In this document: positions 1 through 63,915 of the stretch, piece by piece
Numbering within the stretch: the stretch's first letter is position 1
Layout: every line of letters starts with the position of its first letter
DNA from: Macrostomum lignano
Lineage: Eukaryota
Direction: 5' to 3'
Assembly (NCBI GenBank): GCA_002269645.1
Contig: NIVC01001638.1
Coordinates: 1-64,000 of the forward strand
Length of the DNA: 64,000 bases
The notes under the pieces: model-generated
Seen by the model: only the letters and a program-made list of their open reading frames with translations
Databases searched by the model: none
What the model was told of the DNA's origin: nothing
Position numbers and translations under genes: made by a program

Positions 1-2028
1 ATGGACGCAGCGAAAGAAGAAAAAATCCTCTGAAACAGTCAAGTTGTTGATCAGCGAGTTCAACGACTACGGGCATCGAACCACGGTACACGGCCTGGGC
101 CACATGTACCAGTCCACAGATGTCAGACGAAAGTTATTTTGGCTCCTCATCACTATCGTTGGATGCTTTGCCTGCGGCATTCACATCTACTTCATTGTGG
201 CCAACTAACAACAGAAACTCCAGTTAATTCCGTCATTCTAAACGGTGGAGTCCACGTGAATTTTCCAGACGTGACCCTCTGCAACATGTACCCGATCTCG
301 GAGTCGGTGCAGAACGCACGGAGCGCGGTGAGATCAGGGGTCACATTAGAAAATACTGGAGATTCTTTCGCGGCTTCATCAAAGCCTCAGCCGGAATGGA
401 CAACAGCACCAAGGATAGATTTAAAATGGCCAGGAAGTTCTTCAAAATTTTCTGGCATCCGAGGACACAAGAGACCTGGCTCACGACGACGACCTATTTC
501 TAGTCTACTGCAGGTATAAAAGTCGTCCCTGCTCTAACAAGCAGTTCAAAATGGTTCAAAAACATCGACTACTGGAACTGCTACACATTCACGCCAAAAT
601 TCGACGGAGAGGAGGAGGAAGACAGGCGCGTGTACAGCGGCAACGAAGACGAGGGCTTGAACCTCATCATGTACACCAATTCACACCTCAGAAATATTCA
701 CGCTAGTAACGCATTGACAACGACAAAGGGCTTCTACGATGAGGAAAATAACGGTAAAGACAGTTCAAACGGTGATAAGTCAAACTATTTAGAGCGCTAC
801 CTGGTGAACTACAATCTGTCTCTGAACCAGCTGCTGGCAGGCGATAAAATGGAGCCCGATGGAATTCGGGTCATTCTCCACGAGAAAGGAACTTACCCCC
901 ACATGGACATGAACAGCGTGATCGTTGGCAACGGAGACTACTCCAAAGTCGTCTTCTCAATGGAGCGCAAGATTTCCAAGAACCGGCCGATTTCCCGTGC
1001 CGAGAAACCTCCGAGGACGCCGCCGATGAGGAGGTGGAGTACGTTTCCTACTACCCTGGCGTCGATGTGAGGTACACCACAAGAGACCGCCACCGAACTT
1101 CAAGAAGTTCAAGCGCGATCGACTCGACTACGTAGTGACTCGAGTCCAGGACCTGTTCTGGTCGAGCTGCAGCTGCTACACCCACGTGGTCCCGTTCTCG
1201 CACTTCAACTCGAAGCTGTGCTACTTTTGCAGAAACGGCACGGACCCAGTGGAGATCCGACGCACTCTCGAGCGAGTCCACTGCCACGACAGAGTCTACC
1301 AGAACCAGCTGAAGAAGAACATCCTCACCTACTTCAGCGACTCGCAGCGCTTCCAGCCGTGCACTGGCGACGAATACGACGTGAAGATGGGCAGCTCAGC
1401 GTGGCCCAGCCAGCGCGACATCATGTTCCTCGTCGACCAGTACGTGATTCCCGCCTTCCTGCACGAGAGCGTCGGCAACCGGTCCTACAACAGCATCCTG
1501 AAGAACACGAGAGTCTACCCGATCCGCGACATCGTCGGGACGACGCCCGAGCAGGCGATCGGCTCAAAGACTATCAAGTCGTTCAACTGGACCGTGGACG
1601 AGTTCCTCATTCGCAAGAGCTTCCTCAAGGTGGCCATCCACGCCGACAGCCCGACGGGAACGCTCAACGAAGAGGTCGAGAGCTACTCGTTCGCCGAGGC
1701 GCTGTCGGAGATCGGCGGCATCTTCGGCCTCTACGCCGGCGTCTCGCTGCTCACCTTCTTCGAGTTCGTCGAGCTCGCCTACCTGATGGCCACGAAGCCG
1801 AAGGAGGTGACGCGGCATGAGAAGGACGGCAAGTCGAAGTTCGCCATGCTGCAGCAAACCATGGAGGACGGAGAGCTGCCAGCCAGCGAGGTGCTCAAGT
1901 ACAAGCAGCTGTTCGACCGCGGCAACTGCTGCGCCCTGCCAACGGCCAGCGCCTCCCAGCAGAGCAGGAGCTTCATCATGCAAGCTGAGAGGGAGGGTTC
2001 AGTTCGACGTCCGGTGATTGTTTCTTGA
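1..2028 (+). CDS. DEG/ENaC-family (FaNaC/ASIC-like) amiloride-sensitive cation channel, copy A; intronless, 5'-truncated by the window, with several 1-nt indels
   Basis: Frame from nt 2 reads SETVKLLISEFNDYGHRTTVHGLGHMY (HG motif) then RKLFWLL (TM1). Later pieces give FPDVTLCN, YWNCYTF, GIRVILHE, WPS and TM2 SEIGGIFGLYAGVSLLTFFEFVE; stop at 2026-2028. Frame breaks near ~205, ~335, ~395, ~560, ~988 and ~1080 relative to copy B; sequencing error versus pseudogene is unresolved. Confidence 0.9.
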
Positions 2029-3239
2029 CCCGAATAATTTTGGCCGCAATTTTTCACGCATTCAGAAGGCTGAGTTCCCCGTTCATTGTATTATTGGTGT
2101 TGACTTTGAAGCAGAATAGCTTCATCGGTGCACATGTGCGCGGCTTGTACATGCCTTGCGAAGAGAAAGTCAGGTGCGCGTTGTTAGAGGTCAGTAACTC
2201 GTATGATGGGCCTAACGGATTGCAAGTTGACTATTGCCTTGCTCTGAATAATTTTGCAAGTGTATCCGTGAACTAAATATAAATATCTTACCGAACGACG
2301 TTTCAGCAAAAATATGCAGCTTGGTATGTTTTTGTATTATCCCTTGATATATTGTACATTACTGTTCTATAAAGTGCTGCCATTTTTACTTTCGCGTTTT
2401 CGTTTGGGCGTCGGTTTTTAACTTTTTGGTACCCTGTAAATGGGATTAATGCGAACTCTTTTGATCCTTTGACTCACGTTGATACCATTTTTACCGCTAT
2501 TTGGACAGATAAAACCTTAACAGTATTGCTCATTTAATTGTCTATTAATAAATTTTAGTATGTTTCCTTACATATAAAAGTTATTGTTTTTGCAATCATT
2601 TAATTGATAGTTTGTTATACTTTGCTAAGAGAGCAGCAAACCGGCTTCAAAAAAAAAGAAAAGCAGTGAAAGGCCCACGCAGCGAGAGCACTGCATGCGA
2701 GTGGCTCACAGATGGACTGCAGCTAAAAAGAAGATCTTCGGCACGGTCAGAATGATTGATCGGATTGGCCTAAATAATGTGTGCTTCCAGCGAGGCTGGG
2801 GCAGAGGGCATGTAGGCAATGTGAATCCCTGTGCACCCCTTAGCTGGAATAATACCTTACAGCTATATGCATGTACAGCATATGGTGGAACTGCTGCAGT
2901 ATGAAGGGCGGCATTTCAAGAGAGCAAAAATTACTTCAAGAGCCGCCTTAATACACTGCCTTGCTGTTAGACAGAAATTTCCTTACCTCTGGACGAATAT
3001 GTTGAGGAATAGTGATCTATAGAAGGATGTTACTAAGCCAAAATGCGTTTATATGTACCTTGGTATTTTGCTTTCCTAAAACTGAAATTCAAGAAATAGC
3101 TTGTAAGCCTTATAGTACGTTATTGATGCAGAAAGTTGCAATTTGTAATCGCCTGTCAGATAAAGATCAAGAACTACTAAAGTAGAAGAACGCAACACTC
3201 GAAATCTATGGAAACTGTTTTAAAGGCCTTTTGACTTAC

Positions 3240-3452
3240 TTGACTTAGCTGCAGGGCGGTCCGAAGACTCAGCGGGGAGGCGAGCGTCGCCCATTCCGCT
3301 AATCCCTGAGAGACCCGCATAGGCTAGGGCGAGGGGCCGGTCTGGGAGGTCTGCCGGTCCTGTCTGCAGCGTTGTCCTCGGTGGGGAAGACGGAGGCTCG
3401 TTTGGTGGCCCGGAGGAACCGGATGAGCCGTGGGACGTAGAAAGAAACAACA
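3240..3452 (-). other. Candidate orphan coding exon (213 nt, phase 1-1) in the spacer between the ENaC genes
   Basis: GC-rich island in AT-rich DNA, with acceptor ttcctatttccgtAG and donor GTaagt, open throughout (LFLSTSHGSSGSSGPPNEPP...SSDRPAAKS). Parent gene not identified. Confidence 0.4.
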
Positions 3453-4374
3453 CTACGGAAATAGGAAGTTTTCACTTTTTACATATTACAATTGTTATTG
3501 CTTTCGATAAGAGGCAGACCCAATGTTTATCTTTTGATATGTTGTGCCTTTCCTATAGCCCTATTGATAATTATATAGCTTTTGTTTAGAAAATTAGGAT
3601 TCTATATGTTATTTTTGCATTCTACGTACATTACCTGCACCTAAAAATGCTAAAAAATGCTACACATACTGCTACACAGTCAGCTATAAGAATGACAAAA
3701 TAGATTCATAAAACCAATAAGCCGAGCTGTGCCACTTTAATCGTTTTTAGACACAGGACATGTGCAGTTGTACGTAGAATAAAAATTAACACAGAATCAT
3801 AGTTTTCTGAACAAAAAGCTTTACAAACGTCAATAGAGCTGTAAAAAAGGCACAACATATCAAAAGATGAACATTGGGTCTGCCTACTACCAAAAGCAAA
3901 TACAATTTTAATAATGAAAAAGTGAAAATTTCTTATCCCCGTAGTGTATTTTTCGACGAAAAGTGGCCTTCAAAACTTTTTTTCCATGAAACGTGAGTTT
4001 CGCGTCCTGTATATACGTTGCTTTAGTTGTCCATGCTAAAGATACGCTTGAAACAATAGTCTTAAATCTACATGTATTGTAGTTGTGACACTGAGCGATT
4101 ATAGATTCCAGATTGTCTCCCCTGGCTCACTGCGCGAATAAGTATATATTTGGTCAAGACCCTTTAATCCGCAGTGCACCGACCCGCAACCGCCATAAGC
4201 AGCCGGCCAATCAGGGCAAGCTTAGGGTAGAGAGGTACCTGATATGCTAGGAGGTGACACTGCAGGGGACTGCACGTAAAACGGCTAACAACAATGTAGT
4301 GCGGCAGCCAATTAGAATTTGACTGCCAGGGGCCGGGGCAGTCAGGGTGGGGTGGTGGGTTTAGCAAACGCAGT

Positions 4375-4880
4375 GGGAGAGGCAGGGGGATCAGCAGAGG
4401 CAGAGTGGGGAGCAGAGGCAGAGGGGGAGCAGAGGCAGAGTGGGGAGCAGAGGCAGAGGGGGAGCAGAGGCAGAGTGGGGAGCAGAGGCAGAGGGGGAGC
4501 AGAGGCAAAGTGGGGAGCAGAGGCAGAGTGGGGAACAGAGGCAGAGGGGGGCAGAGGCAGAGGGGGGCAGAGGCAGAGGGGGCAGAGGCAGAGTGGGGAG
4601 CAGAGGCAGAGGGGGGCAGAGGCAGAGGGGGGCAGAGGCAGAGTGGGGAGCAGAGGCAGAGGGGGGGGGCAGAGGCAGAGGGGGGCAGAGGCAGAGTGGG
4701 GGCAGAGGCAGAGTGGGGAGCAGAGGCAGAGGGGGGCAGAGGCAGAGGGGGGCAGAGGCAGAGTGGGGGCAGAGGCAGAGTGGGGGCAGAGGCAGAGTGG
4801 GGAGCAGAGGCAGAGGGGGGCAGAGGCAGAGGGGGCAGAGGCAGAGTGGGGGCAGAGGCAGAGTGGGGAGCAGAGGCAGA
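4375..4880. repeat. G-rich minisatellite, ~15-16-bp unit (GGGGCAGAGGCAGAG / GGGGAGCAGAGGCAGAGT)
   Basis: Direct inspection; produces the spurious ORFs 4164..5009. Confidence 0.95.
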
Positions 4881-5750
4881 AGAGGAAGGCAGAGAAGGAT
4901 TTTAACAAACTCTGAATCACTTCGTTTTCAATGCTTAGGGCAGAGGCTGAAACTTAGCTTCCGATATGTATATATCAGAAATTTTTTTTCGCTGTTAACT
5001 TCTAATTAAAATTAGTAAAATAATTTTGTTGAAACAAAATCTCTATTATTTGGATTTCTAATCAGTTCCAAAAATGTATCGTTTTTTCTGTCTATTCAGC
5101 ATCCACAAAATCCACGAAACTTCATTGATAACGGAGTTACGAGTAGACAGCATATTGACTGGTACAGACAACCGATGCACTGACATATATTTGCATTTAT
5201 TACAGGAAATTAGTATAGAATTCAATAAGTATTCTGTGATTTATGTGTGACATGAAAGTGCAATAACTTAGGCGTAAATTCAATGAAAGTCAACAGTTAA
5301 AAACTCCTGCTAGGGATAACAAAAACACAACACAACTACAACTATTTAAGTTGTCTTTAATTTCTGCAAAAAATTATACATTTATAATACATCAAGTTTT
5401 ACATAGCATTTTATTGAATAATGAACAACTTCCAACGCTCTGAAACTTCTTGGATGCTGCAGTTCGACAAACTAGAGACTTTATTTATTGCTTTTTCTAC
5501 TGAACCTTACGTCGAATCAATCTGCTGTACTACTAGACAGTAGTGCTATGTGGGTAATTTATTGAAGCCAGCCTGTTTTTCTCCGTTAATCTAGCATCAG
5601 CTGTACCTAAATTGCTGTTGAAGTCTGAAGACGGTGGTCTGGTTATGCTCAATGAAACTTATTTTGTTTTTTGCACTTTACATCAGTTGCTACTGACAAG
5701 TAGTTTAAATGATTAACGAAATAAGCACTTATAAATAATTCAGCGATAAC

Positions 5751-7848
5751 TCAAGCAAGGAAAAGAGAGTCCTCCCTCTCAGCTTGCATGATGAAGCTCC
5801 TGCTCTGCTGGGAGGCGCTGGCCGTTGGCAGGGCGCAGCAGTTGCCGCGGTCGAACAGCTGCTTGTACTTGAGCACCTCGCTGGCTGGCAGCTCTCCGTC
5901 CTCCATGGTTTGCTGCAGCATGGCGAACTTCGACTTGCCGTCCTTCTCATGCCGCGTCACCTCCTTCGGCTTCGTGCCATCAGGTAGGCGAGCTCGACGA
6001 ACTCGAAGAAGGTGAGCAGCGAGACGCCGGCGTAGAGGCCGAAGATGCCGCCGATCTCCGACAGCGCCTCGGCGAACGAGTAGCTCTCGACCTCTTCGTT
6101 GAGCGTTCCCGTCGGGCTGTCGGCGTGGATGGCCACCTTGAGGAAGCTCTTGCGAATGAGGAACTCGTCCACGGTCCAGTTGAACGACTTGATAGTCTTT
6201 GAGCCGATCGCCTGCTCGGGCGTCGTCCCGATGATGTCGCGGATCGGGTAGACTCTCGTGTTCTTCAAGATGCTGTTGTAGGACCGGTTGCCGACGCTCT
6301 CGTGCAGGAAGGCGGGAATCACGTACTGGTCGACGAGGAACATGATGTCGCGCTGGCTGGGCCACGCTGAGCTGCCCATCTTCACGTCGTATTCGTCGCC
6401 AGTGCACGGCTGGAAGCGCTGCGAGTCGCTGAAGTAGGTGAGGATGTTCTTCTTCAGCTGGTTCTGGTAGACTCTGTCGTGGCAGTGGACTCGCTCGAGA
6501 GTGCGTCGGATCTCCACTGGGTCCGTGCCGTTTCTGCAAAAGTAGCACAGCTTCGAGTTGAAGTGCGAGAACGGGACCACGTGGGTGTAGCAGCTGCAGC
6601 TCGACCAGAACAGGTCCTGGACTCGAGTCACCACGTAGTCGAGTCGATCGCGCTTGAACTTCTTGAAGTTCGGTGGCGGTCTCTTGGTGGTGTACCTCAC
6701 ATCGACGCCAGGGTAGTAGGAAACGTACTCCACCTCCTCATCGGCGGCGTCCTCGGAGGTTTCTCGGCACGGGAAATCCGGCCGGTTCTTGGAAATCTTG
6801 CGCTCCATTGAGAAGACGACTTTGGAGTAGTCTCCGTTGCCAACGATCACGCTGTTCATGTCCATGTGGGGTAAGTTCCTTTCTCGTGGAGAATGACCCG
6901 AATTCCATCGGGCTCCAACCTGTCTCCGGCTAGCAGCTGGTTCAAAGAAAGACTGTAATTCACCAGGTAGCGTTCGAGAAAATTAGACTGATCTCGACGC
7001 AACCCCTGTTTTGCTTCGCTTCGTGTCAGATTTATAATTCCGTCTACAGTCGTGAGGCTGTTGTTCGCATGGATATTTCTGAGGTGCGAATTGGTGTACA
7101 GAATCATGTTGAGACCGTCGTCTTCATTTCCACTGTACACGCGCCTGTCCTCATCTTCCTCTCCATCGAACTTTGGCGTGAATGTGTAACAGTTCCAGTA
7201 GACAATGTTCTGCACCATTTTGAAATGCTTGCTAGTGCACTTACGGTTTTTGTATCTGCAGTAAACTAGAAATAGGTCGTCGTCGTGAGCCAGGTCTCTT
7301 GTGTCCTCGGATGCCCAGAAAATTTGAAAGAACTTCCTGGCCATTTGAAATCGATTCCTGGTGCTATTTTCATATCCCGTCGAAGCTTTGATGAAGCCGC
7401 GAAAGAATCTCCAGTATTTTCTAATGTGACCCCGGATCTCACCGGCTCCGTGGTTCTGCACCGACTCCGAGATCGGGTACATGTTGCAGAGGGTCACGTC
7501 TGGAAAGGTCACTCGAATCCCACCGTTGAGAATGACGGAATTAACTGGAGTCTCGTTGTAGTTTTCTACAATGAAGTAGATGTGAACTCCACAGGCTATT
7601 GAGCCAATAACGGTGAGCGCTAGCCAGAACAGTTTGCGTCTCATGTCTGTAGACTGGTACATGTGGCCCAGGCCGTGCACCGTGGTTCGATGCCCGTAGT
7701 CGTTGAACTCGCTGATCAACATTTGCGCCGTTTCGGCCGCTGATTTTGGTCGATTCTGACTGCGCGGATAGTTTTGAGGAGGTGCTGGTGGAAGGTCCGG
7801 CTTCCATGGTCTTTTCTGTGGCTCCGCCATCTCTTTAGGGCCTTGCAT
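5751..7848 (-). CDS. DEG/ENaC-family (FaNaC/ASIC-like) channel, copy B; intronless, ~700 aa after correcting two 1-nt deletions
   Basis: ORFs 6856..7848, 5957..6865 and 5751..6548 join if one C is restored at ~6870 (TACCCC[C]ACATG) and at ~5977 (GATGG[C]CACG); both bases are present in copy A. HG motif, TM1, Cys-rich extracellular domain and TM2 with a GVS filter are all present. Confidence 0.93.
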
Positions 7849-9793: not shown

Positions 9794-10300
<507 letters not shown>

Positions 10301-10557: not shown

Positions 10558-12981
10558 CTTTAAGGTCTGCCTTGACGCCAGGATGCAACTGTTAAATCAA
10601 ACGTTTTCCAAACTGGTAAGTTACTGTATTTGTTATCGGAACCACGCTGACTAATAAAAATTTATGCCTGTAAAATCTGTAGTGACTTAAAATGCTAATT
10701 CTTTCAGTGCAAAACGGAAAGTAGTGCAAGTTTCTAGGAAATCATTTGAAATTGTTTACATTAATACTGATAAACCGGTTTAACGTGGTTTAATGTCTCC
10801 ACCGATAAGAATATCGTAGTTTAGACCAACTTTATTTCAAGTCAACAACACGGATGCACTAACTAAGTAATCTGTTTGAAGTGTCCTAAATTTTCAAATC
10901 TACATTAGAGGAAAAACTTCAATTCCTTATATAATCTCATTCAAAATGTCAGTTTCAGTTTAGGATATTTAAGGACTTTATTTGTTCAGGTAGACTTCCG
11001 GCTCCTCTTCAATGTAAGTTTATTGCTTGCAGGGTTAATTCCTTTTTCGCTTGTGTCTCTAGCTCATCCCAACGATAATTTCCCTCATTGATCCCTCCTG
11101 GCTAATCCCTCCTCTCTAATCCCTCCTCTCTAATCCCTCCTCTCTAATCCCTCCTCGCTAATCCCTCCTCTCTAATCCCTCCTCTCTAATCCCTCCTCAC
11201 TAATCCCTCCTCTCTAATCCCTCCTCTCTAATCCCTCCTCGCTAATCCCTCCTCTCTAATCCCTCCTCTCTTATCTCTCCTCGTTAATCCCTTCTCGCTA
11301 ATCCCTCCTCTCTAATCCCTCCTCTCTAATCCCTCCTCACTAATCCCTCCTCACTAATCCCTCCTCTCTAATCCCTCCTCTCTAATCCCTCCTCGCTAAT
11401 CCCTCCTCTCTAATCCCTCCTCTCTAATCCCTCCTCGCTAATCCCTTCTCGCTAATCCCTCCTCTTTAATCCCTCCTCTCTAATCCCTCCTCTCTAATCC
11501 CTCCTCTCTAATCCCTCCTCTCTAATCCCTCCTCTCTAATCCCTCCTCTCTTATCTCTCCTCGTTAATCCCTTCTCGCTAATCCGTCCTCTATAATCCCT
11601 CCTCGCTAATCCCTCCTCTCTAATCCCTCCTCTCTAATCCCTCCTCTCTAATCCCTCCTTGCTAATCCCTCCTGACTAATCCGTCCTCGCTAATCTTGCA
11701 TCGCTAATCCCTCCTCGCTAATCCCTCCTCGCTAATCCCTCCCCGCTAATTCCTCCTCACTAATCCCTCCTCGCTAATCCCTTCTCGCTAATCCCTCCTC
11801 TTTAATCCCTCCTCTCTAATCCCTCCTCTCTAATCCCTCCTCTCTAATCCCTCCTCTCTAATCCCTCCTCTCTAATCCCTCCTCTCTTATCTCTCCTCGT
11901 TAATCCCTTCTCGCTAATCCGTCCTCTATAATCCCTCCTCGCTAATCCCTCCTCTCTAATCCCTCCTCTCTAATCCCTCCTCTCTAATCCCTCCTTGCTA
12001 ATCCCTCCTGACTAATCCGTCCTCGCTAATCTTGCATCGCTAATCCCTCCTCGCTAATCCCTCCTCGCTAATCCCTCCCCGCTAATTCCTCCTCACTAAT
12101 CCCTTCTCGCTAATCCCTCCTCTTTAATCCCTCCTCTCTAATCCCTCCTCGCTAATCCCTCCTTGCTAATCCCTCCTCTCTAATCCCTCCTCTCTAATCC
12201 CTCCTATCTAATCCCTCCTCTCTAATCCCTCCTCTCTAATCCCTCCTCTCTAATCCCTCCTCGCTAATCCCTCCTTGCTAATCCCTCCTCTCTAATCCCT
12301 CCTCTCTAATCCCTCCTCACTAATCCCTCCTCTCTAATCCCTCCTCTCTAATCCCTCCTCGCTAATCCCTCCTCTCTAATCCCTCCTCTCTTATCTCTCC
12401 TCGTTAATCCCTTCTCGCTAATCCGTCCTCTATAATCCCTCCTCGCTAATCCCTCCTCTCTAATCCCTCCTTGCTAATCCCTCCTGACTAATCCGTCCTC
12501 GCTAATCTTGCATCGCTAATCCTTCCTCGCTAATCCCTCCTCGCTAATCCCTCCCCGCTAATTCCTCCTCACTAATCCCTCCTCGCTAATCTCTCGCTAA
12601 ACTAATAAAGTGACTAACCAGTTGAAAGCTACCTGTCTTTCAATCTTTCATCTGACCCTAGAAAGTTTTTAATCTTATTTGAGCAGGTATATTTGAGCAT
12701 ATTTTATATTTTTTGTTTGAAGAGACCACTGTCTACCCAGATTAAAATCAATTGGCTACACTGTACCTATAGAAATAAATAGCCCCTGACTAGCTACCCT
12801 GCAGCAGAGCTACGTGTATAAAGTTGTGTATCAAGCTCTACAATGTGCATTTTCGATTTTAGCAAAATCTTTCTCCAATACGGATAGCAATGTTCCACAG
12901 TGTTCAAAGCTTATTGAGATCAAGTACCGTACATACACAAGTGCCTACGAAGGGAATTTTTGGGACAAAGCCTTGACTTGA
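10558..12981 (+). CDS. Candidate 3' part of an unidentified gene: exons ~10558/10565-10615, 10990-11013 and 12901-12981 (possibly also 9661-9744)
   Basis: Two micro-exons have AG acceptors and strong GTAAGTT donors; the terminal exon follows ttccacAG. They join in frame as ..FKVCLDARMQLLNQTFSKL/VDFRLLFN/CSKLIEIKYRTYTSAYEGNFWDKALT*. No family recognised. Confidence 0.3.
11092..12598. repeat. 14-bp C-rich minisatellite (TAATCCCTCCTCTC)n with higher-order duplications
   Basis: About 105 units; the variant marker TAATCTTGCATCGC recurs at ~11691, ~12027 and ~12504. Confidence 0.97.
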
Positions 12982-13096: not shown

Positions 13097-15148
13097 TCGT
13101 GGATAGAATCTCAGTGACACACAATCCGTGGATAGAGTCCCACTGACACAATCAGTGGATAGAGTCCCACTGACACACAATCTGTGGATAGAGTCTCACT
13201 GACACACAATCCGTGGATAGAGTCCCACTGACACAATCCGTGGATAGAGTCCCACTGACACACAATCCGTGGATAGAGTCCCACTGACACACAATCTGTG
13301 GATAGAGTCCCACTGACACACAATCCATGGATAGAGTCCCACTGACACACAATCTGTGGATAGAGTCCCACTGACACACAATCTGTGGATAGAGTCTCAC
13401 TGACACACAATCCGTGGATAGAGTCTCACTGACACACAATCCGTGGATAGAGTCCCACTGACACACAATCCATGGATAGAGTCCCACTGATATACAATCC
13501 GTGGATAGAGTCCCACTGACACACAATCCGTGGATAGAGTCCCACTGACACACAATCCGTGGATAGAGTCCCACTGACACACAATCCGTGGATAGAGTCC
13601 CACAGACACACAATCCGTGGATAGAGTCCCACTGACACACAATCCGTGGATAGAGTCCCACTGACACACAATCCGTGGATAGAGTCCCACTGACACACAA
13701 TCCGTGGATAGAGTCCCACTGACACACAATCCGTGGATAGAGTCCCACTGACACAATCCGTGGATAGAGTCCCACTGACACACAATCCGTGGATAGAGTC
13801 CCACTGACACACAATCCGTGGATAGAGTCCCACTGACACACAATCCGTGGATAGAGTCCCACTGACACAATCTGTGGATAGAGTCCCACTGACACACAAT
13901 CCGTGGATAGAGTCCCACTGACACACAATCCGTGGATAGAGTCCCACTGACACACAATCCGTGGATAGAGTCCCACTGACACACAATCCGTGGATAGAGT
14001 CCCACTGACACACAATCCGTGGATAGAGTCCCACTGACACAATCCGTGGATAGAGTCCCACTGACACACAATCCGTGGATAGAGTCCCACTGACACACAA
14101 TCCGTGGATAGAGTCCCACTGACACACAATCCGTGGATAGAGTCCCACTGACACACAATCCGTGGATAGAGTCCCACTGACACACAATCCGTGGATAGAG
14201 TCCCACTGACACACAATCCGTGGATAGAGTCCCACTGACACACAATCCGTGGATAGAGTCCCACTGACACACAATCCGTGGATAGAGTCCCACTGACACA
14301 CAATCCGTGGATAGAGTCCCACTGACACAATCCGTGGATAGAGTCCAACTGACACAATCCGTGGATAGAGTCCCACTGACACACAATCCGTGGATAGAGT
14401 CCCACTGACACAATCCGTGGATTGAGTCCCACTGACACAATCCGTGGATAGAGTCCCACTGACATACAATCCGTGGATAGAGTCCCACTGACACACAATC
14501 CGTGGATAGAGTCCCACTGGCACACAATCCGTGGATAAAGTCCCACTGACACACAATCCGTGGATAGAGTCCCACTGACACACAACCCGTGGATAGAGTC
14601 CCACTGACACACAATCCGTGGATAGAGTCCCACTGACACACAATCCGTGGATAGAGTCCCACTGACACACAATCCGTGGATTGAGTCCCACTGACACAAT
14701 CCGTGGATAGAGTCCCACTGACACAATCCGTGGATTGAGTCCCACTGACACAATCCGTGGATTGAGTCCCACTGACACAATCCGTGGATTGAGTCCCACT
14801 GACACACAATCCGTGGATAGAGTCCCACTGACACAATCCGTGGATTGAGTCCCACTGACACAATCCGTGGATAGAGTCCCACTGACACAATCCGTGGATA
14901 GAGTCCCACTGACACACAATCCGTGGATAGGGTCCCACTGACACACAATCCGTGGATTGAGTCCCACTGACACACAATCCGTGGATAGAGTCCCACTGGC
15001 ACACAATCCGTGGATAGAGTCCCACTGACACAATCCGTGGATAGAGTCCCACTGACACAATCCGTGGATAGAGTCCCACTGACACACAATCCGTGGATAG
15101 AGTCCCACTGACACACAATCCGTGGATAGAGTCCCACTGACACAATCC
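13097..15148. repeat. 29/27-bp minisatellite (CCGTGGATAGAGTCCCACTGACA[CA]CAAT)n
   Basis: About 70 units; explains the 574-690 aa periodic minus-strand ORFs. Confidence 0.98.
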
Positions 15149-17896: not shown

Positions 17897-19291
17897 GTGC
17901 CACCGTCCAGCCCGCAGAGACCCCAGCAGACCTGGGCATGGCTAATCCTGGCGTTCGCCGCCATCAATGTCATCTTTCTGGGCGGCAAACGGCGCGCATT
18001 CGGCGTCTTCGTAGCCCAACTGCACGTCGAATTCAATCAAACCATCACGCTGGCCGAGCTAAACTGGATCGGCGACTCGTACGCCGCATTCGGCTACATG
18101 ACCACCACGCTGAGCACGTCGACCATTTTAGCCTACGGCCGCAGATTCCAGCTGTTCCAACTGCTCGGCACTCTTGCAATCCTGCTGGCCTGCGTCACCA
18201 GCGCGTTCGTACCAAATCCGCACTGGCTGTTTCTCACGCACACTCTGTTTCACGGCATTGGATCGTCGCTAATCCTCAGCGTAGTTGGTCTGGTTGTCAA
18301 CGAACACTTCGATAAGCAGCATCCGTACCACATTCTGGCTACGACACTAGTCAGTGGAGGCTCCATAGCGTCCATATTGTTTGTGCAACTGTACGCCTAT
18401 CTGATAGAGGTTTACAACTGGAGAAATGCCTTCCTAATTCTTGGCGTTATCTACTTCTTTGTCACTCTGACTGGCAGTTGTTTTTTTACGAAACGCGAAG
18501 ATTTGCCACCGTACGCTAACGATAAGAAATGCCTGGGCGCTATTTGGGATGTTGAACGGGATAAAGTTCCCTATTTAGTGCTTTGGTTCTTCGATCGAAT
18601 TATGACTAGTATTGTTACGTACGGTATGCTGCTGAACCTAGCTGACTATGTCAGGCGCAGGGAGGCTTCGCTGACTAAGAGCTCCCATCTGACGCTGCTG
18701 TTCGCATCCGGAGAAGCGTCCACCTACGCCATTGCAGCGGTGATCGCCGTGCTCACAAAGAACCTGTTGAAAAATCGACTCAAATATATTCTGAGCTCCA
18801 CAACCTTCGTGATGTCCTGCTCGCTAATCTACTGGGAAGTTGTCGCCTCGAACGAGACGTTGAGCTATTTCTTGGCCTACCTGTCCGGATTCTGCATGGG
18901 TCCGAGTATAACGTTTCTGTTCCCGGCCGGTGAGGAGATGACGATGCTGCCGGGACACCTGGCCTATCCGTTTAGCCTGGCCGGCATGGGTGTCGGCATG
19001 GCGCTGTCGCCGTCCGTCACCGCCATGATAGCCGAACGCTACGAGTATCGTTACTTTTTCGTCATCCAGGGCTTTCTGATGTTCTTCAAATTCCTGGCCC
19101 TACTAACCGCCATCATAATGCAACGCCTGGCGGCTAGAAGTGCGGCCGGGGTGGGCGGTCACAAATATGAGCTGGTGAAACAGCTGGACTTGCCTATGCC
19201 TGACGAGGTGGAGCCAGGCACTGCCGTTGCTGCGGCTGATGCGCTTCGCGAAAGGGGATCCTCAATTAACTCGAGTACTAGGAACTATTAA
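17897..19291 (+). CDS. MFS transporter, monocarboxylate transporter (SLC16/MCT)-like; one large exon, probably spliced to an upstream exon
   Basis: 464-aa ORF with about 12 hydrophobic segments and MCT-like motifs: WAWLILAFA..GKRRAFGVF, LNWIG, FHGIGSSL..VNEHFDK..LATTLVSGG, WRNAFLILG. Candidate acceptor AG at 17885 or 17888; true start not determined. Confidence 0.88.
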   Translation: MPPSSPQRPQQTWAWLILAFAAINVIFLGGKRRAFGVFVAQLHVEFNQTITLAELNWIGDSYAAFGYMTTTLSTSTILAYGRRFQLFQLLGTLAILLACVTSAFVPNPHWLFLTHTLFHGIGSSLILSVVGLVVNEHFDKQHPYHILATTLVSGGSIASILFVQLYAYLIEVYNWRNAFLILGVIYFFVTLTGSCFFTKREDLPPYANDKKCLGAIWDVERDKVPYLVLWFFDRIMTSIVTYGMLLNLADYVRRREASLTKSSHLTLLFASGEASTYAIAAVIAVLTKNLLKNRLKYILSSTTFVMSCSLIYWEVVASNETLSYFLAYLSGFCMGPSITFLFPAGEEMTMLPGHLAYPFSLAGMGVGMALSPSVTAMIAERYEYRYFFVIQGFLMFFKFLALLTAIIMQRLAARSAAGVGGHKYELVKQLDLPMPDEVEPGTAVAAADALRERGSSINSSTRNY

Positions 19292-23184: not shown

Positions 23185-33156
<9,972 letters not shown>

Positions 33157-45319: not shown

Positions 45320-46770
45320 CATTCAGGTCCTTGATGCTGAATACTCAGATCCCTAATCCCAAATACTCAGATCCCCAATCCTAAATACTCAGATCCCCAA
45401 TCCTAAATACTCAGATACCTAATCCCAAATACTCAGATCCCTGATCCCAAATACTCAGATCCCTGATCCCAAATACTCAGATCCCTGATCCCAAATACTC
45501 AGATCTCTGATCCCAAATACTCAGATCTCTGATCCCAAATACTCAGATCCCTGATCCTAAAATACTCAGATTCACAATCCCAAATACTCAGGTCCCTAAT
45601 CCCAAATACTCAGATCCCTAATCCCAAATACTCAGATCCCCAATCCCAAATACTCAGATCCCCAATCCCAAATACTCAGATCCCCAATCCCAAATACTCA
45701 GATCCCTAATCCCAAATACTCAGATCCCCAATCCTAAATACTCAGATCCCTAATCCCAAATACTCAGATACCTAATCCCAAATACTCAGATCCCTAATCC
45801 CAAATACTCAGATCCCTGATCCCAAATACTCAGATCCCCAATCCTAAATACTCAGATCCCTAATCCCAAATACTCAGATCCCTGATCCCAAATACTCAGA
45901 TACCTAATCCTAAATACTCAGATCCCTAATCCCAAATACTCAGATCCCTAATCCCAAATACTCAGATCCCCAATCCCAAATACTCAGATTCCTGATCTCA
46001 AATACTCAGATCCCCAATCCTAAATACTCAGATCCCTGATCCCAAATACTCAGATCCCTGATCCCAAATACTCAGATCCCTGATCCCAAATACTCAGGTC
46101 CCTGATCCTAAAATACTCAGATTTACAATCCCAAAAACTCAGGTCCCTGATCCCCAATACTCAGATCCCTAATCCCAAATACTCAGATCCCCAATCCCAA
46201 ATACTCAGATCCCCAATCCCAAATACTCAGATTCCTGATCCCAAATACTCAGATCCCCAATCCTAAATACTCAGATCCCCAATCCTAAATACTCAGATCC
46301 CTAATCCCAAATACTCAGATCCCTGATCCCAAATACTCAGATCCCCAATCCTAAATACTCAGATCCCTAATCCCAAATACTCAGATCCCTGATCCCAAAT
46401 ACTCAGATACCTAATCCTAAATACTCAGATCCCTAATCCCAAATACTCAGATCCCTAATCCCAAATACTCAGATCCCCAATCCCAAATACTCAGATTCCT
46501 GATCCCAAATACTCAGATACCTAATCCCAAATACTCAGATCCCTAATCCCAAATACTCAGATCCCTGATCCCAAATACTCAGATCCCTAATCCCAAATAC
46601 TCAGATCCCCAATCCTAAATACTCAGATCCCTGATCCCAAATACTCAGATCCCTGATCCCAAATACTCAGATCCCTGATCCCAAATACTCAGGTCCCTGA
46701 TCCTAAAATACTCAGATTTACAATCCCAAAAACTCAGGTCCCTGATTTCCAATACTCAGATTCACAATCC
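45320..46770. repeat. 22-bp minisatellite (CCCAAATACTCAGATCCCTAAT)n
   Basis: About 65 units; the variant marker AAAATACTCAGATTTACAATCCCAAAAACTCAGG occurs at ~46110 and ~46706. Confidence 0.97.
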
Positions 46771-60369: not shown

Positions 60370-63300
60370 ATGTCAAGCTGTCCATCAGAGTTGATTGTCT
60401 CAGCAGCCCAGCAGGCAGTTGAATCTCTTGCTGATCCGTCCGCAGTGTCTCGACCTCCATTTCAATGCTTCGCCGATGCTCATTCTGCTCAATGCTATTT
60501 TGCTAAACAAATTCTAGACTTATTGACGCCCTACCTATTGCAAGTAGTGCAATCCGATGCCAATAATGATTTAACAATGGGTTGGAGAGCTCAAGCTAAG
60601 CTAATGCAATATTTGCTTGGATCTCAGTTCACTAATCGCTTTATTAGCCAAGATAATGAAACTGCTAAGCCTGAGTATCGAGCTGTTCAGAGATTAGTTG
60701 GCGAAGTTGTTCGCGAGCTGGCCGACTGTGATGCCAAAAAGAAATTACGCAGTTGCCTTGGAGACATGGAAGAAAGAAACATTAGTAGCAATGATGATGA
60801 TAATGGCGATAAGGCAACGCCCAGACATGATAGTGTTGATGCGCCAACAGTGGTTAGGCGTGGCTGCGCTCGGCTTGTGTCTCATGTGAGCCTTCGGTTT
60901 TGTGCGTTGGTAATATTAATTAGAGAGCTGTAGAACAGAATATCTGTAAACAAGCGATTGGATATGGAAAAATATAGAATGGATCTATGATCGATAACAT
61001 ATTAAAATGGGGAAAACAGATGATCAAATCGGGGTACAACAGATGACCAAAATAGGGTAGAACAGATGATCAAATTGGGGTAGAACAGAGTATCGAATTG
61101 GGGTAGAACAGAGTATCGAATTGGGGTAGAACAGAGTATCGAATTGGGGTAGAACAGGTGATCGAATTGGGGTAGAACAGAGTATCGAATTGGGGTAGAA
61201 CAGGTGATCGAATTGGGGTAGAACAGATGATCAAATTGGGGTAGAACAGAGGATCAAATTGGGGTAGAACAGATGATCAAATTGGGGTAGAACAGGTGAT
61301 CAAATTGGGGTAGAACAGAGTATCGAATTGGGGTAGAACAGAGTAACGAATTGGGGTAGAACAGAGTATCGAATTGGGGTAGAACAGGTGATCAAATTGG
61401 GGTAGAACAGAGTATCGAATTGGGGTAGAACAGAGGATCAAATTGGGGTAGAACAGATGACCAAAATAGGGTAGAACAGATGATCAAATTGGGGTAGAAC
61501 AGAGTATCGAATTGGGGTAGAACAGAGTATCGAATTGGGGTAGAACAGAGTATCGAATTGGGGTAGAACAGAGTATCGAATTGGGGTAGAACAGGTGATC
61601 GAATTGGGGTAGAACAGATGATCAAATTGGGGTAGAACAGAGGATCAAATTGGGGTAGAACAGATGACCAAAATAGGGTAGAACAGATGATCAAATTGGG
61701 GTAGAACAGAGTATCGAATTGGGGTAGAACAGAGTATCGAATTGGGGTAGAACAGAGTATCAAATTGGGGTAGAACAGATGATCGAATTGGGGTAGAACA
61801 GATGATCAAATTGGGGTAGAACAGATGATCGAATTGGGGTAGAACAGAGGATCAAATTGGGGTAGAACAGATGATCGAATTGGGGTAGAACAGATGATCG
61901 AATTGGGGTAGAACAGATGATCAAATTGGGGTAGAACAGATGATCAAATTGGGGTAGAACAGATGATCGAATTGGGGTAGAACAGAGGATCAAATTGGGG
62001 TAGAACAGAGGATCAAATTGGGGTAGAACAGATGATCAAATTGGGGTAGAACAGATGATCGAATTGGGGTAGAACAGAGGATCAAATTGGGGTAGAACAG
62101 ATGATCAAATTGGGGTAGAACAGATGATCAAATTGGGGTAGAACAGAGGATCAAATTGGGGTAGAACAGATGATCAAATTGGGGTAGAACAGAGGTTCAG
62201 ACAGTATCCCAAACAAGCATAAGAATTGGACTAGAGATTAAATTATGAAAGAAAAGTCTCTCAAACTCGTCAAACAAACAGGCAAGCGCAAAAAAATCGC
62301 GGCCGACGCAATGAAGATCGCCTATTGGTGTCGGCATTCTCGCCGGACGCCAATAGCCAGGCGAATTTCTTGGCCGTTCTGGACGGTCACGGCGGCAGCG
62401 ACGGAGCCGACTTGGCCGCTTCCTATCTGCTGCCATTGTTCCTGTCTTATTCTTTTCATAGCGACTCTGATAGCAAGTCAGAATTGGTTGAAAAACTTCG
62501 TCGAACGTTTGTCGATGCCGACGCGAAATTGGGCGAAGCCGCTAGCCAATGCGGAGCATCGGGCGGAGCCACTTGCACGGTTTGTTCGGGGCATGAAAAT
62601 TTTATTTGTGTCCCAACTGTGGGGAAATACTTCAGTGTTTTTCTTATGGTAATCTCCGATATCCCGATATTCATCCTGATCCCAAATATCCCTACAAATC
62701 CCTATCAAATCCCAAATATCCCTACAATCCCTATCTTATCCCCGATATCCATCCTAATCCCAAATATCCCTACAAATCCGTATCTAATCCCAAATATCCC
62801 CACAAATCCCTGTCTAATCCTAATTATATTCTAGAAATCCCCTAATCTCAAATGTCCTCACAAATTCCTATCTAATCCCAAATATCCCTACAATCCCTAT
62901 CTTATCCCCGATATCCATCCTAATCCCAAAAATCCCTAAAAATCCGTATCTAATCCCAAATATCCCTACAATTCCTATCTTATCCCCGATATCCATCCTA
63001 ATCCCAAAAATCCCTAAAAATCCGTATCTAATCCCAAATATCCCTACAATCCCTATCTTATCCCCGATATCCATCCTAATCCCAAAAATCCCTACAAATC
63101 CGTATCTAATGCCAAATATCCTAAGAATCCCTATCTAACCCCAAATATCCCATCCCATCTACTTCCAAACATCCCTACAAATCCCTATCTAATCCCAAAT
63201 GTCCCCCAAAATCCGTATGTAATCCCAGATATCCCTAAAAATCCCTTTATAATGCCAAGCGTCCCTACGTAATCTCAGATATCCATACAAATGGTTATAT

Positions 63301-63915
63301 AATCCCAAATATCCCCGCAAATCCTTTTCTGTTTGAAATGTTGCATCCTAAGTTGGGATGCCTAACTGCTGGTAGCGGATTAAACATGTAAGTATAATGT
63401 CTTCACTCTTAAAAAAACAGGTGTGCATCTTATCCGGTGATCAGTTAACTGTAGCCTGGGCTGGCGACTCGGAAGCCTGGCTAGTGCATAGCAACGGCCT
63501 AGCAACCCAGCTGACAGCGCCGCCGCATAGGCCCAGCATCCCGGCTGAGCGTAGCCGAGTGGAATCTGCTGGCGGCTTCGTGATGGACGGCAACCCGCCA
63601 AGACTGAATGGCGTGCTGGCTGTCACTCGCAGTCTGGGCGATCGCGGAGTTACAGGATCAACACCTGAACCGGAAGTCGTGCATCGGCAATTGAAACTCA
63701 GCGAAGATGCAGACGGAAGTAAAGATGTCTGCGTAGTGCTGGCTAGCGATGGGCTGTGGGACGCTGTGGCGCCTAACGATGCAGCCGCCGCGCTAGTTGC
63801 TATGCAAGCTGATGACTCAACTAAGAGCGAAGCTGCAGCTGCTAATGCTCTGATTGATATGGCTGTGGCTGCCGGGTCAACCGATAATGTGACCGTTGTT
63901 GTAGCTTGGTTGTGA
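60370..63915 (+). CDS. PP2C/PPM-family Ser/Thr phosphatase (PPM1E/PPM1F-like). Exons 60370-60885, 62282-62579, 63421-63915
   Basis: Motifs KNRGRRNEDR, DGHGG, GGAT, AWAGDS, LAVTRSLGD, LASDGLWD and GSTDNVTV, with GT-AG junctions. The exon 1/2 phase fits only if the A7 run at 62290-62296 is A6 (LVSH/ASAKNRGRRNEDR). Confidence 0.9.
61005..62193. repeat. 23-bp minisatellite in PP2C intron 1 (AATTGGGGTAGAACAGATGATCA)n
   Basis: Period 23, about 51 units. Confidence 0.97.
62660..63320. repeat. Degenerate ~30-bp minisatellite in PP2C intron 2 (ATCCCAAATATCCCTACAAATCCCTATCTA)n
   Basis: Direct inspection; higher-order 88-bp repeats at ~62870-63080. Confidence 0.9.

What the first reader, a model, noticed from the sequence alone, without database searches (positions are those of the whole stretch)
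850..6917. Inverted DEG/ENaC pair sharing a near-identical 1147-bp 3' half but diverged 5' halves
Seen: +850..1996 and -6917..5771 are the same length and differ only by three substitutions I could find plus 1-nt indels. Identity begins abruptly at TGGAGCCCGAT and ends at GAGAGGGAGG, just before two unrelated C-tails (GSVRRPVIVS vs DSLFLA). Upstream of 850/6917 the copies differ at many synonymous and replacement sites. Known: inverted paralogues can be homogenised by intrachromosomal gene conversion, and DEG/ENaCs assemble as trimers. Inference: a recent conversion tract keeps the distal extracellular domain, TM2 and pore identical, while the N-terminus, TM1 and proximal ectodomain diverge. 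This would give two subunits with one pore design but different sensing regions.
Basis: partly seen in the sequence, partly recalled or inferred. Interest (0 to 1): 0.72.

Follow-up and report, generated by a model that had tools for sequence, protein, structure and literature searches.

The report
Gene-converted inverted flatworm ion-channel gene pair
Two neighbouring, oppositely oriented sodium-channel (DEG/ENaC) genes of the flatworm Macrostomum lignano have had their 3' halves made nearly identical by gene conversion while their 5' halves stayed about 19% different; this is a real but ordinary kind of paralogue evolution, and the one-base indels in the window are assembly errors.

Summary
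Window +850..1996 and -6917..5771 differ by 3 substitutions and 4 one-base indels, while the homologous 5' halves differ at 19.6% of sites. A maximum chi-square test puts the breakpoint at position 850.

Both copies are single-exon DEG/ENaC genes (Pfam ASC) of Macrostomum lignano. Copy A is Mlig030741. Copy B is unannotated.

The same convergent pair, with identical tract borders, occurs at the two other homeologous loci of assembly Mlig_3_7. Across 7 sequences there are 146 fixed A/B differences in the 5' half and none in the 1147-bp tract. dS falls from 0.78 to about 0.01, so selection alone cannot explain the identity. Gene conversion is the best explanation. The main event predates the split of the three subgenomes, and four-gamete incompatibilities hint at later internal exchanges.

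All four indels in the tract, and six more in copy A's 5' half, are private to the window. The window's first 5.5 kb is the same DNA as the end of contig NIVC01003962.1 (no true substitutions, 24 one-base indels), where gene A is intact. So the frameshifts in A are consensus errors, not pseudogene decay.

The functional idea, a shared gating and pore module with divergent finger and sensing modules, is plausible but untested. This is a new instance of a well-known process, of low to moderate interest.

The parts
1..2028 (+). Copy A (Mlig030741-type DEG/ENaC gene). The CDS is cut by the window start (its first 195 coding nt are missing) and the stop codon is at 2026-2028. In the window its frame is broken by consensus-error indels at 7, 207, 213, 316, 325, 454, 558, 989 and 1080.
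   Evidence: Pfam ASC hits. Intact 739-aa counterparts are P0001 and P0003. Window 1-5515 matches L004 with no true substitutions and 24 one-base indels.
32..849 (+). Copy A, diverged 5' half. It holds the pre-TM1 HG motif (80-103), TM1 (134-199), the post-TM1 FPDVTLCN motif (262-300), the finger region, and a beta6-like strand (654-680).
   Evidence: 19.6% nucleotide difference from B. dS 0.78, dN 0.12, omega 0.155. Motif coordinates.
705..800 (+). Hypervariable patch of copy A. It is inferred to be the beta6-beta7 loop and lies just 5' of the tract border.
   Evidence: 48 mismatches per 100 columns plus codon indels. dN 0.42-0.46 in sliding windows.
850..1996 (+). Copy A arm of the near-identical conversion tract. 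It runs from the beta7-like strand (852-893) through the Cys-rich middle ectodomain and TM2 (1711-1788) into most of the cytoplasmic C-terminus.
   Evidence: TM2 and beta7 coordinates.
1997..2028 (+). Copy A private C-terminal tail (GSVRRPVIVS) and stop codon. Homology with B ends at 1996.
2029..5750 (.). Spacer of 3.7 kb between the convergent genes, with no gene found. It contains its own inverted repeat and a 17/18-nt minisatellite.
   Evidence: The ORF list shows only repeat-derived ORFs. The spacer is collinear in L001, L003 and L004, so there is no inversion between homeologues.
3444..3954 (.). Spacer-internal inverted repeat: arms 3444-3630 and 3769-3954, 81.6% identical, with a 138-nt loop. 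It lies near the centre of symmetry of the gene pair.
   Evidence: No further residual inverted homology was found in the spacer.
4378..4880 (.). Minisatellite (AGCAGAGGCAGAGGGGG)n in the spacer.
5751..5770 (-). Copy B private C-terminal tail (DSLFLA) and stop codon.
5771..6917 (-). Copy B arm of the conversion tract (TM2 at 6055-5978). In the window its frame is broken by private one-base deletions at ~6868-6871 and ~5976.
   Evidence: Both deletions are absent from L001 B, L003 B and every A copy.
6918..7734 (-). Copy B, diverged 5' half: HG motif 7686-7663, TM1 7632-7567, finger region, beta6-like strand 7116-7090, hypervariable patch ~7065-6967.
7735..7848 (-). Copy B N-terminal region, essentially unalignable with A's longer N-terminus. 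The start codon is at 7848-7846.
   Evidence: protein alignment.

Best explanation
Two convergent, single-exon DEG/ENaC paralogues of Macrostomum lignano arose by an old inverted duplication (dS about 0.8). Copy A is Mlig030741 (739 aa) and copy B is an unannotated 699-aa gene. Non-reciprocal recombination between the two inverted copies on one chromosome (interlocus gene conversion) later overwrote, and probably repeatedly overwrites, the 3' 1147 bp of one copy with the other. The tract runs from the start of the beta7-like strand to the point where homology ends altogether, 6-10 codons before the stop codons. Its left edge sits just 3' of a hypervariable, indel-bearing loop. I infer that this loop, together with the accumulated divergence upstream, blocks heteroduplex extension, so the 5' half (N-terminus, TM1, finger) has escaped concerted evolution while the 3' half (middle and lower ectodomain, TM2, C-terminus) has not. 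Both genes are under purifying selection and are probably functional. The one-base indels that break both reading frames in this window are consensus errors of a PacBio CLR assembly, concentrated near a contig end. Shown: the tract, its sharp borders, its replication at three homeologous loci, the dS collapse, the GC3 excess, selection on both copies, and the error origin of the indels in copy A. Inferred: the molecular mechanism, recurrence of conversion, the barrier role of the hypervariable patch, and any functional consequence.
For: Both assemblies place the breakpoint at window 850: chi2 224 and 233, against permutation maxima of 23-30. dS is 0.78 in the 5' half and about 0.01 in the tract, with omega 0.155 in the 5' half. 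The loci L001 (NIVC01001178.1), L003 (NIVC01000293.1) and L004 (NIVC01003962.1) of Mlig_3_7 carry the same arrangement. In a 7-sequence alignment, 146 columns are fixed A/B differences in the 5' half and 0 in the tract, and the first fixed differences resume at 849 and 1997 in every copy. GC3 is 0.86 in the tract, 0.61-0.65 in the 5' halves, and 0.51-0.66 in two other window genes; the 5' halves show 57 S>W against 29 W>S changes. These GC patterns are as expected under GC-biased conversion with decay after escape. Older fragments appear in the 5' half: a run of 17 outgroup-informative sites with A=B at ~332-378 (P=0.0004), and pS(AB) of 0.22-0.28 at codons 141-220 without a matching dip against the outgroup. 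Later exchange is suggested by tract sites 1534 and 1551 being four-gamete-incompatible with 929 and 1959. B is constrained: window B against L001 B shows 16 synonymous and 5 non-synonymous changes, pN/pS 0.086, and B is an intact 699-aa ORF in L001. On the indels: window 1-5515 against L004 has no true substitutions and 24 one-base indels, clustered at the two contig ends. A is intact in L001, L003 and L004, and all four tract indels are private to window sequences.
Against: All the assemblies derive from one PacBio CLR data set. Canu read correction and Pilon short-read polishing (PMC5730564) can blur sparse differences among six near-identical tract copies. The 0.26-0.44% A/B divergence is therefore a lower bound, and the single-site 'concerted' patterns (1534, 1551) could be polishing artefacts. 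No raw spanning reads, PCR or transcripts were available. The two deletions in window copy B cannot be checked against a second assembly of the same homeologue, so a real lesion there is not excluded. High GC3 is also seen in the unpaired outgroup paralogue (0.80), so GC3 is not specific evidence for conversion within this pair. The direction of conversion and its donor are unknown.
Confidence: 0.85

Rival explanations
1. Assembly artefact. The near-identity of the two 3' halves was created by collapse, by read correction across repeats, or by mis-polishing, and in the real genome only one copy has this 3' half or the copies are much more diverged.
For: The region was hard to assemble. Contig NIVC01003962.1 ends inside the spacer, and the window's contig appears to begin inside gene A, with degraded consensus at both ends. 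The genome holds six near-identical tract copies. The assembly used Canu correction and Pilon polishing with multi-mapping short reads (PMC10733133 reports that 93% of read pairs map to multiple loci).
Against: Three separate contigs (the window, L001, L003) each span A-specific 5' sequence, tract, unique spacer, tract and B-specific 5' sequence, with identical borders. Correction or polishing cannot turn ~19% divergence into 0.3% over exactly 1147 bp while leaving 27% divergence in the adjacent 41 nt. Each copy keeps private singleton variants. The structure is only 7.8 kb, within reach of single PacBio reads.
Confidence: 0.05
2. The reverse history. A and B are a young duplication, which explains the identical 3' halves, and the 5' half of one copy was later replaced by ectopic conversion from a third, diverged paralogue.
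For: The right border of identity coincides with the end of all homology, as a duplication breakpoint would. Copy B is itself unannotated, so unannotated donors could exist elsewhere in the genome.
Against: No protein with a closer 5' half was found; the only other relative is 66% identical. Sequence 5' of the homologous core and the whole spacer are unrelated between A and B, which is unlike a young duplication. Divergence along the 5' half is itself a mosaic, with dS 0.27 to above 1 and short identical fragments, which fits a long shared history of A and B.
Confidence: 0.06
3. In this homeologue, one or both copies are real pseudogenes, meaning the frameshifts in the window are genuine mutations.
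For: The indels are present in the window sequence. L003's B copy carries an apparent lesion with in-frame stops, so loss of B in one subgenome is conceivable after whole-genome duplication.
Against: For A, the same DNA assembled in L004 is intact, with no true substitutions in 5.5 kb. The ratio of indels to substitutions is far too high for real evolution: 9 indels and no substitutions in A's first 1.1 kb. The indels sit in short homopolymers and cluster at contig ends. For B, two deletions in 2.1 kb match the background of about 1 indel per kb, and pN/pS is 0.086.
Confidence: 0.05
4. Purifying selection alone, without conversion, keeps the 3' halves identical.
For: The 3' half encodes TM2 and conserved ectodomain strands.
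Against: Synonymous divergence is about 0.01 in the tract and 0.78 next to it. Against the outgroup paralogue, the same codons show pS of 0.26-0.65. The cytoplasmic C-terminus, usually poorly conserved, is also identical.
Confidence: 0.01

Closest known systems
Interlocus (ectopic) gene conversion between closely spaced inverted paralogues, with partial escape from concerted evolution. Textbook cases recalled from my own knowledge and not tested here: arm-to-arm conversion in human Y-chromosome palindromes, and the primate gamma-globin HBG1/HBG2 conversion tract with a sharp border.
   Same: Mosaic identity with abrupt borders. Synonymous differences are erased inside the tract. Paralogue-specific differences are kept outside it. 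GC content is raised in the converted part. The copies lie a few kb apart on one chromosome. The tract is bounded by loss of homology.
   Different: Here the tract covers only the 3' 55% of a single-exon coding sequence of a convergent ion-channel pair in a flatworm. It is replicated in three homeologous subgenomes. Its left border falls at a structural domain boundary of the protein. No inversion of the spacer, which is the crossover outcome, is seen among the homeologues.
FMRFamide-gated sodium channels (FaNaC; Aplysia 7yvb/7yvc, Malacoceros FaNaC1 8on7)
   Same: Best-scoring solved structure (E 2.5e-23). Shared features are the DEG/ENaC topology, the HG motif, post-TM1 FPxVTxCN, the Cys pattern around CYTF, and TM2 GxS. 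In FaNaC1 the ligand pocket is built from finger helices alpha1-alpha3 and the beta6-beta7 loop (PMC11026163), which correspond to the parts that lie in the diverged half here.
   Different: Only aa ~30-256 and ~460-627 align, and the middle ectodomain is not alignable. Three other M. lignano channels from the clade next to FaNaCs gave no FMRFamide currents, and Mlig030741 was not among them (PMC9234716). Ligand and gating for this pair are unknown.
Heteromeric DEG/ENaC assemblies from paralogous subunits (ENaC alpha/beta/gamma; ASIC1a/2a heteromers), from my own knowledge of the family
   Same: Paralogous subunits with a common fold co-assemble as trimers, and different ectodomains tune gating.
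   Different: ENaC and ASIC subunits are diverged along their whole length and are not kept identical in one half by conversion. Co-assembly of A and B is untested.

Membership tests
DEG/ENaC superfamily (Pfam ASC, PF00858) | Significant match to the ASC profile above the curated threshold | tested here: met
   B N-terminal ORF: E 3.7e-29, 102.5 bits (cut-off 23.6). The 3' ORFs of B and A: E 2.9e-16 and 2.4e-16. The database annotates P0001 and P0002 with PF00858.
DEG/ENaC superfamily (Pfam ASC, PF00858) | Two transmembrane helices flanking a large Cys-rich ectodomain, a pre-TM1 HG motif, and a TM2 G-x-S motif | tested here: met
   HG motif in TTVHGLGH (A 80-103, B 7686-7663). TM1 at A 134-199 and B 7632-7567. 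TM2 IGGIFGLYAGVSLLTFFEFVELAYLM at A 1711-1788 and B 6055-5978. G-V-S aligns with G-I-S of Aplysia FaNaC TM2.
DEG/ENaC superfamily (Pfam ASC, PF00858) | Trimeric, amiloride-sensitive Na+-selective channel activity | not testable with these tools
   This needs heterologous expression and electrophysiology.
FaNaC (FMRFamide-gated Na+ channel) family | Activation by FMRFamide or related peptides through the finger pocket | not testable with these tools
   The top hit among solved structures is only a local match. Other M. lignano channels near the FaNaC clade did not respond to FMRFamide (PMC9234716). I do not file this pair as FaNaC.
Interlocus gene conversion tract | Mosaic similarity with statistically supported, abrupt breakpoints | tested here: met
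   The maximum chi-square breakpoint is at 850 in two paralogue pairs: chi2 224 and 233, against permutation maxima of 23-30. The longest identical run is 717 nt, against a null maximum of 132.
Interlocus gene conversion tract | Synonymous divergence collapses inside the tract, so constraint is not the cause | tested here: met
   dS is 0.78 in the 5' half and about 0.01 in the tract. pS to the outgroup over the same codons is 0.26-0.65.
Interlocus gene conversion tract | The pattern is reproduced in independent copies or assemblies, with paralogue-specific differences outside the tract only | tested here: met
   Three homeologous loci: 146 fixed A/B columns in the 5' half and 0 in the tract. 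Caveat: all contigs come from one read set.
Interlocus gene conversion tract | Phylogenetic incongruence: tract sequences group by locus rather than by paralogue | tested here: inconclusive
   There are only 4 informative sites. 1551 groups L001 A with L001 B, 929 and 1959 group L001 B with L003 B, and the four-gamete test is violated. Polishing artefacts cannot be excluded.
Interlocus gene conversion tract | GC enrichment of the converted segment (GC-biased gene conversion) | tested here: inconclusive
   GC3 is 0.86 in the tract and 0.61-0.65 in the 5' halves, and substitution in the 5' halves is AT-biased (57 S>W, 29 W>S). However, the unpaired outgroup paralogue also has GC3 of 0.80.
Interlocus gene conversion tract | Physical confirmation of both copies by spanning reads or PCR | not testable with these tools

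The most novel reading that the evidence does not exclude
The conversion domain is not just a mechanical leftover but is held in place by selection. The border at the beta6-beta7 loop/beta7 junction is conserved in all three subgenomes. This keeps the gating, thumb, palm and TM2 module of the two subunits interchangeable, favouring co-assembly into heterotrimers with a uniform pore, while the finger and beta6-beta7 ligand-sensing module is free to diverge. That would be modular concerted evolution of a ligand-gated channel pair.
Probability: 0.12. Interest if true: 0.55.

Novelty: new member of a known kind. Interest (0 to 1): 0.3.

Why it matters
For genome annotation, there are three practical results. 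The pair includes a constrained, apparently functional DEG/ENaC gene (copy B) that is missing from the Mlig_3_7 gene set at all three homeologous loci. The window's frameshifts should not be read as pseudogenes. And two contigs overlap unmerged at this inverted repeat. For evolutionary genetics, this is a clean, triply replicated example of domain-bounded concerted evolution in a neopolyploid flatworm. It could be used to study how conversion tracts end at divergent patches, and how conversion interacts with homeologues after whole-genome duplication. For channel biology, nature has in effect made a chimera pair with the same thumb, palm, TM2 and C-terminus and a different N-terminus, TM1 and finger. 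This could be used to map gating determinants once a stimulus for these orphan channels is known. None of this is surprising in kind, because partial gene conversion between nearby inverted paralogues is well established.

Tried and rejected
(1) I looked for further ASC genes in the window and for an inverted partner of the 66% paralogue in L002. There were none, so the arrangement is not a general family feature within reach of the data.

(2) I tried using L002 to decide which C-terminal tail is ancestral. The L002 gene is degenerate or frameshifted before TM2 and does not reach the tail.

(3) I tested whether the spacer keeps residual inverted homology, which would show one large ancestral palindrome centred on the 3444-3954 inverted repeat. 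The local alignment score was 21.5 against a shuffle maximum of 21.5, so this is not supported.

(4) I tried to map the tract border onto solved structures by sequence and by a 3-sequence profile. Residues ~256-460 do not align to any PDB chain. The beta6 / beta6-beta7 loop / beta7 assignment therefore rests on motif-level comparison and the Pfam coordinate (about model position 225 of 455). It is an inference.

(5) I did not run structure prediction. Only three close homologues were available for an alignment, a single-sequence model would be unreliable, and the main conclusion does not depend on it.

(6) The literature has no paper mentioning Mlig030741. The three M. lignano channels tested by Dandamudi et al. 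are other genes.

(7) My first 7-sequence alignment used wrong coordinates for L003 B, because that copy's ORF stops after 144 aa. I redid it.

(8) I could not place the window on a named contig directly. The exact protein look-up needs an annotated product, and the window's other genes are multi-exon or lack an ATG start. That the window begins at a contig end is inferred from the bimodal indel distribution.

Full report
WHAT IS IN THE SEQUENCE. The window's first 8 kb holds a long inverted repeat. A gapped alignment of +1..2400 against the reverse complement of 5301..7800 shows homology from about 32/7734 to 1996/5771. Inside +850..1996 and -6917..5771 there are exactly three substitutions (1134, 1498, 1534) and four one-base indels (896, 989/6779, 1080/6687, 1790). 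Both arms are 1147 nt. Upstream, 159 of 813 aligned sites differ. Identity starts at TGGAGCCCGAT and ends at GAGAGGGAGG, and the sequences are unrelated beyond that point, giving the two tails GSVRRPVIVS and DSLFLA. The maximum chi-square breakpoint is at position 850 (chi2 233, against a maximum of 29.8 in 2000 permutations). The 41 nt before it carry 11 differences.

WHAT THE GENES ARE. All the ORF pieces match Pfam ASC (PF00858; E 3.7e-29 and ~3e-16). The frame-corrected copy B is 699 aa. Its best database relatives are Macrostomum lignano BOX15_Mlig030741g1 (P0001, 739 aa, 90%) and Mlig031565g1 (P0002, 66%). P0001 carries every A-specific residue and A's tail, so copy A is Mlig030741. Both genes are single-exon and convergent, 3.7 kb apart. 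They have the HG motif, TM1, the FPDVTLCN motif, a Cys-rich ectodomain, and a TM2 with G-V-S. The nearest solved structure is Aplysia FaNaC (E 2.5e-23), but only the N-terminal third and the TM2-proximal part align. No paper mentions Mlig030741. The three M. lignano channels that failed to respond to FMRFamide in PMC9234716 are other genes.

THE ONE-BASE INDELS ARE ASSEMBLY ERRORS. Each of the four tract indels is a deletion in a short homopolymer that breaks the frame of the copy lacking the base. Copy A has six more frame-breaking indels in its 5' half. M. lignano has three homeologous subgenomes that differ by 1.4-2.4% in SNPs, and all three are present in assembly Mlig_3_7 (PMC10733133). 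Accordingly there are three annotated Mlig030741 genes (g1-g3), on contigs NIVC01001178.1 (L001), NIVC01000293.1 (L003) and NIVC01003962.1 (L004). Window 1-5515 matches the last 5.5 kb of NIVC01003962.1 with no true substitutions but 24 one-base indels. These cluster in the window's first 1.1 kb (9 indels) and in the last 1.3 kb before that contig's end (13 or more), with about 1 per kb in between. This is what two overlapping, unmerged contig ends look like when each has degraded consensus at its own end. Gene A is an intact 739-aa ORF in L001, L003 and L004. All four tract indels are private to window sequences. Mlig_3_7 is a Canu assembly of PacBio CLR reads polished with Pilon (PMC5730564), so residual homopolymer errors in multi-mapping regions are expected. 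Window copy B's two deletions cannot be checked against a second assembly of the same homeologue. They do fit the background rate, and B is an intact ORF in L001.

THE TRACT IS REPLICATED. L001 and L003 are collinear with the window and carry the same convergent pair. In the 7-sequence alignment (A from the window, L004, L001 and L003; B from the window, L001 and L003), 146 columns in the 5' half are fixed A/B differences and none of the 1147 tract columns is. Fixed differences stop at 849 and resume at 1997 in every copy. The ten variable tract columns are six singletons plus four informative sites.

WHY GENE CONVERSION. Between the clean L001 copies, dS is 0.78 and dN 0.12 (omega 0.155) over the 266 homologous 5' codons, against dS of about 0.01 over the 384 tract codons. 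The same tract codons show pS of 0.26-0.65 against the outgroup paralogue, so neither constraint nor a low mutation rate explains the identity. The duplication is old, both copies have been under purifying selection, and the 3' part was homogenised later.

GC3 is 0.86 in the tract, 0.61-0.65 in the 5' halves, and 0.51-0.66 in two unrelated window genes. Polarised changes in the 5' halves are AT-biased (57 S>W, 29 W>S). This fits GC-biased conversion followed by decay after escape. It is not decisive, because the unpaired outgroup also has GC3 of 0.80.

TIMING AND RECURRENCE. The same borders occur in all three subgenomes, so the main homogenisation predates their divergence. 'Recent' is true only relative to the duplication.

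Within the 5' half, pS(AB) drops to 0.22-0.28 at A codons 141-220 without a matching drop against the outgroup. A GENECONV-style run test finds 17 consecutive informative sites with A=B at window ~332-378 (P=0.0004) and 12 at ~421-480 (P=0.023). These look like older, shorter conversion fragments.

Within the tract, sites 1534 and 1551 (shared by both paralogues of L001) are four-gamete-incompatible with 929 and 1959 (shared by the B copies of L001 and L003). This implies at least one internal exchange after the subgenomes split, unless short-read polishing produced the pattern.

Taken together, the picture is a conversion domain that has shrunk over time. It is now bounded on the right by the end of homology, and on the left by a hypervariable, indel-bearing patch (A 705-800; 48% mismatches; dN ~0.45). 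That the patch acts as a barrier to heteroduplex extension is my inference.

FUNCTION. Copy B is not called as a gene at any Mlig_3_7 locus. Even so, window B against L001 B shows 16 synonymous and 5 non-synonymous differences (pN/pS 0.086), so B is a constrained and presumably functional gene.

By Pfam coordinates the tract begins near model position 225 of 455. By motif comparison it begins at the beta7-like strand EPDGIRVILHEKGT, after a beta6-like strand and a long loop (inference). In FaNaC1 the peptide pocket is formed by finger helices alpha1-alpha3 and the beta6-beta7 loop, with the neighbouring subunit's alpha6 (PMC11026163). The corresponding regions fall in the diverged half here, while the thumb, palm, knuckle, TM2 and C-terminus fall in the tract. 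But TM1 and the HG re-entrant region, which also shape the pore, are in the diverged half, and expression, co-assembly and gating are all untested.

RIVALS. An assembly artefact is unlikely (0.05). Three contigs span all the junctions with identical borders, and polishing cannot produce a step from 27% to 0.3% divergence. The reverse history, a young duplication with a replaced 5' half, lacks a donor and conflicts with the unrelated flanks and the mosaic 5' half (0.06). Real pseudogenisation is excluded for A and unlikely for B (0.05). Selection alone is refuted by the synonymous sites.

VERDICT. This is a real, well-replicated partial gene-conversion tract between inverted DEG/ENaC paralogues of M. 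lignano. It is a new example of a known process, with useful annotation consequences and modest general interest (0.3).

Noticed in passing
window 5751-7848 (-); L001 15608-17707 (-): Copy B is a 699-aa DEG/ENaC ORF, intact in L001 and under strong purifying selection (pN/pS 0.086). It is absent from the called genes at every Mlig_3_7 locus examined, and its exact sequence is not in the protein collection.
   Followed up: yes
L003 17408-17432 (-): The B copy on contig NIVC01000293.1 has a scrambled 25-nt patch (AAAATAATTCAAA----TTCAAAGCTTCA against AAAATACTGGAGATTCTTTCGCGGCTTCA) with a 4-nt deletion and in-frame stops after aa 144. This is either loss of B in one subgenome or a local misassembly.
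   Followed up: partly
window 1-5515 = L004 10196-15695 (NIVC01003962.1, positions 1-5500, reversed): These are two unmerged overlapping contig ends. NIVC01003962.1 stops inside the spacer, 256 bp before B's stop codon, and the window appears to start inside gene A. One-base indels pile up at each contig's own end.
   Followed up: yes
window 3444-3630 and 3769-3954: A 187-nt inverted repeat (81.6% identity, 138-nt loop) in the spacer, found nowhere else in the window. It lies roughly equidistant from the two stop codons once the minisatellite is discounted (1416 against 1294 nt). It may be a remnant of the original palindrome centre or a foldback element.
   Followed up: partly
L001 A, at window-equivalent positions 599 and 620: The A copy of one homeologue carries the B-specific base at two sites 21 nt apart inside the diverged 5' half. 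This could be a very short B-to-A conversion patch.
   Followed up: no
L002 10001-11756 (NIVC01001503.1): The gene model for the 66% paralogue Mlig031565g1 (565 aa) ends in an out-of-frame tail before TM2. tblastn picks up the TM2-proximal region in another frame at 11625-11756. Its synonymous distance to the A/B tract drops to 0.26-0.42 at A codons 485-560, while pN stays at 0.17-0.33.
   Followed up: no
window 4378-63258 (about 21 arrays): About 18 kb of the 64-kb window (28%) is mini- or microsatellite arrays. Examples: a 29-mer x72 at 13098-15144, a 35-mer x75 at 23535-26119, a 14-mer x107 at 11091-12595, (ATCT)n at 9794-10300 with its complement (ATAG)n at 27530-28782, a 22-mer x64 at 45340-46761, and a 23-mer x52 at 61004-62193.
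   Followed up: no
window 17897-19291 (+); 63397-63915 (+): Other coding sequence in the window: a 464-aa open frame matching Major Facilitator Superfamily MFS_1 (E 2.5e-19) with no in-frame ATG near its start, and an exon matching the C-terminal part of protein phosphatase 2C (E 3.1e-33).
   Followed up: partly
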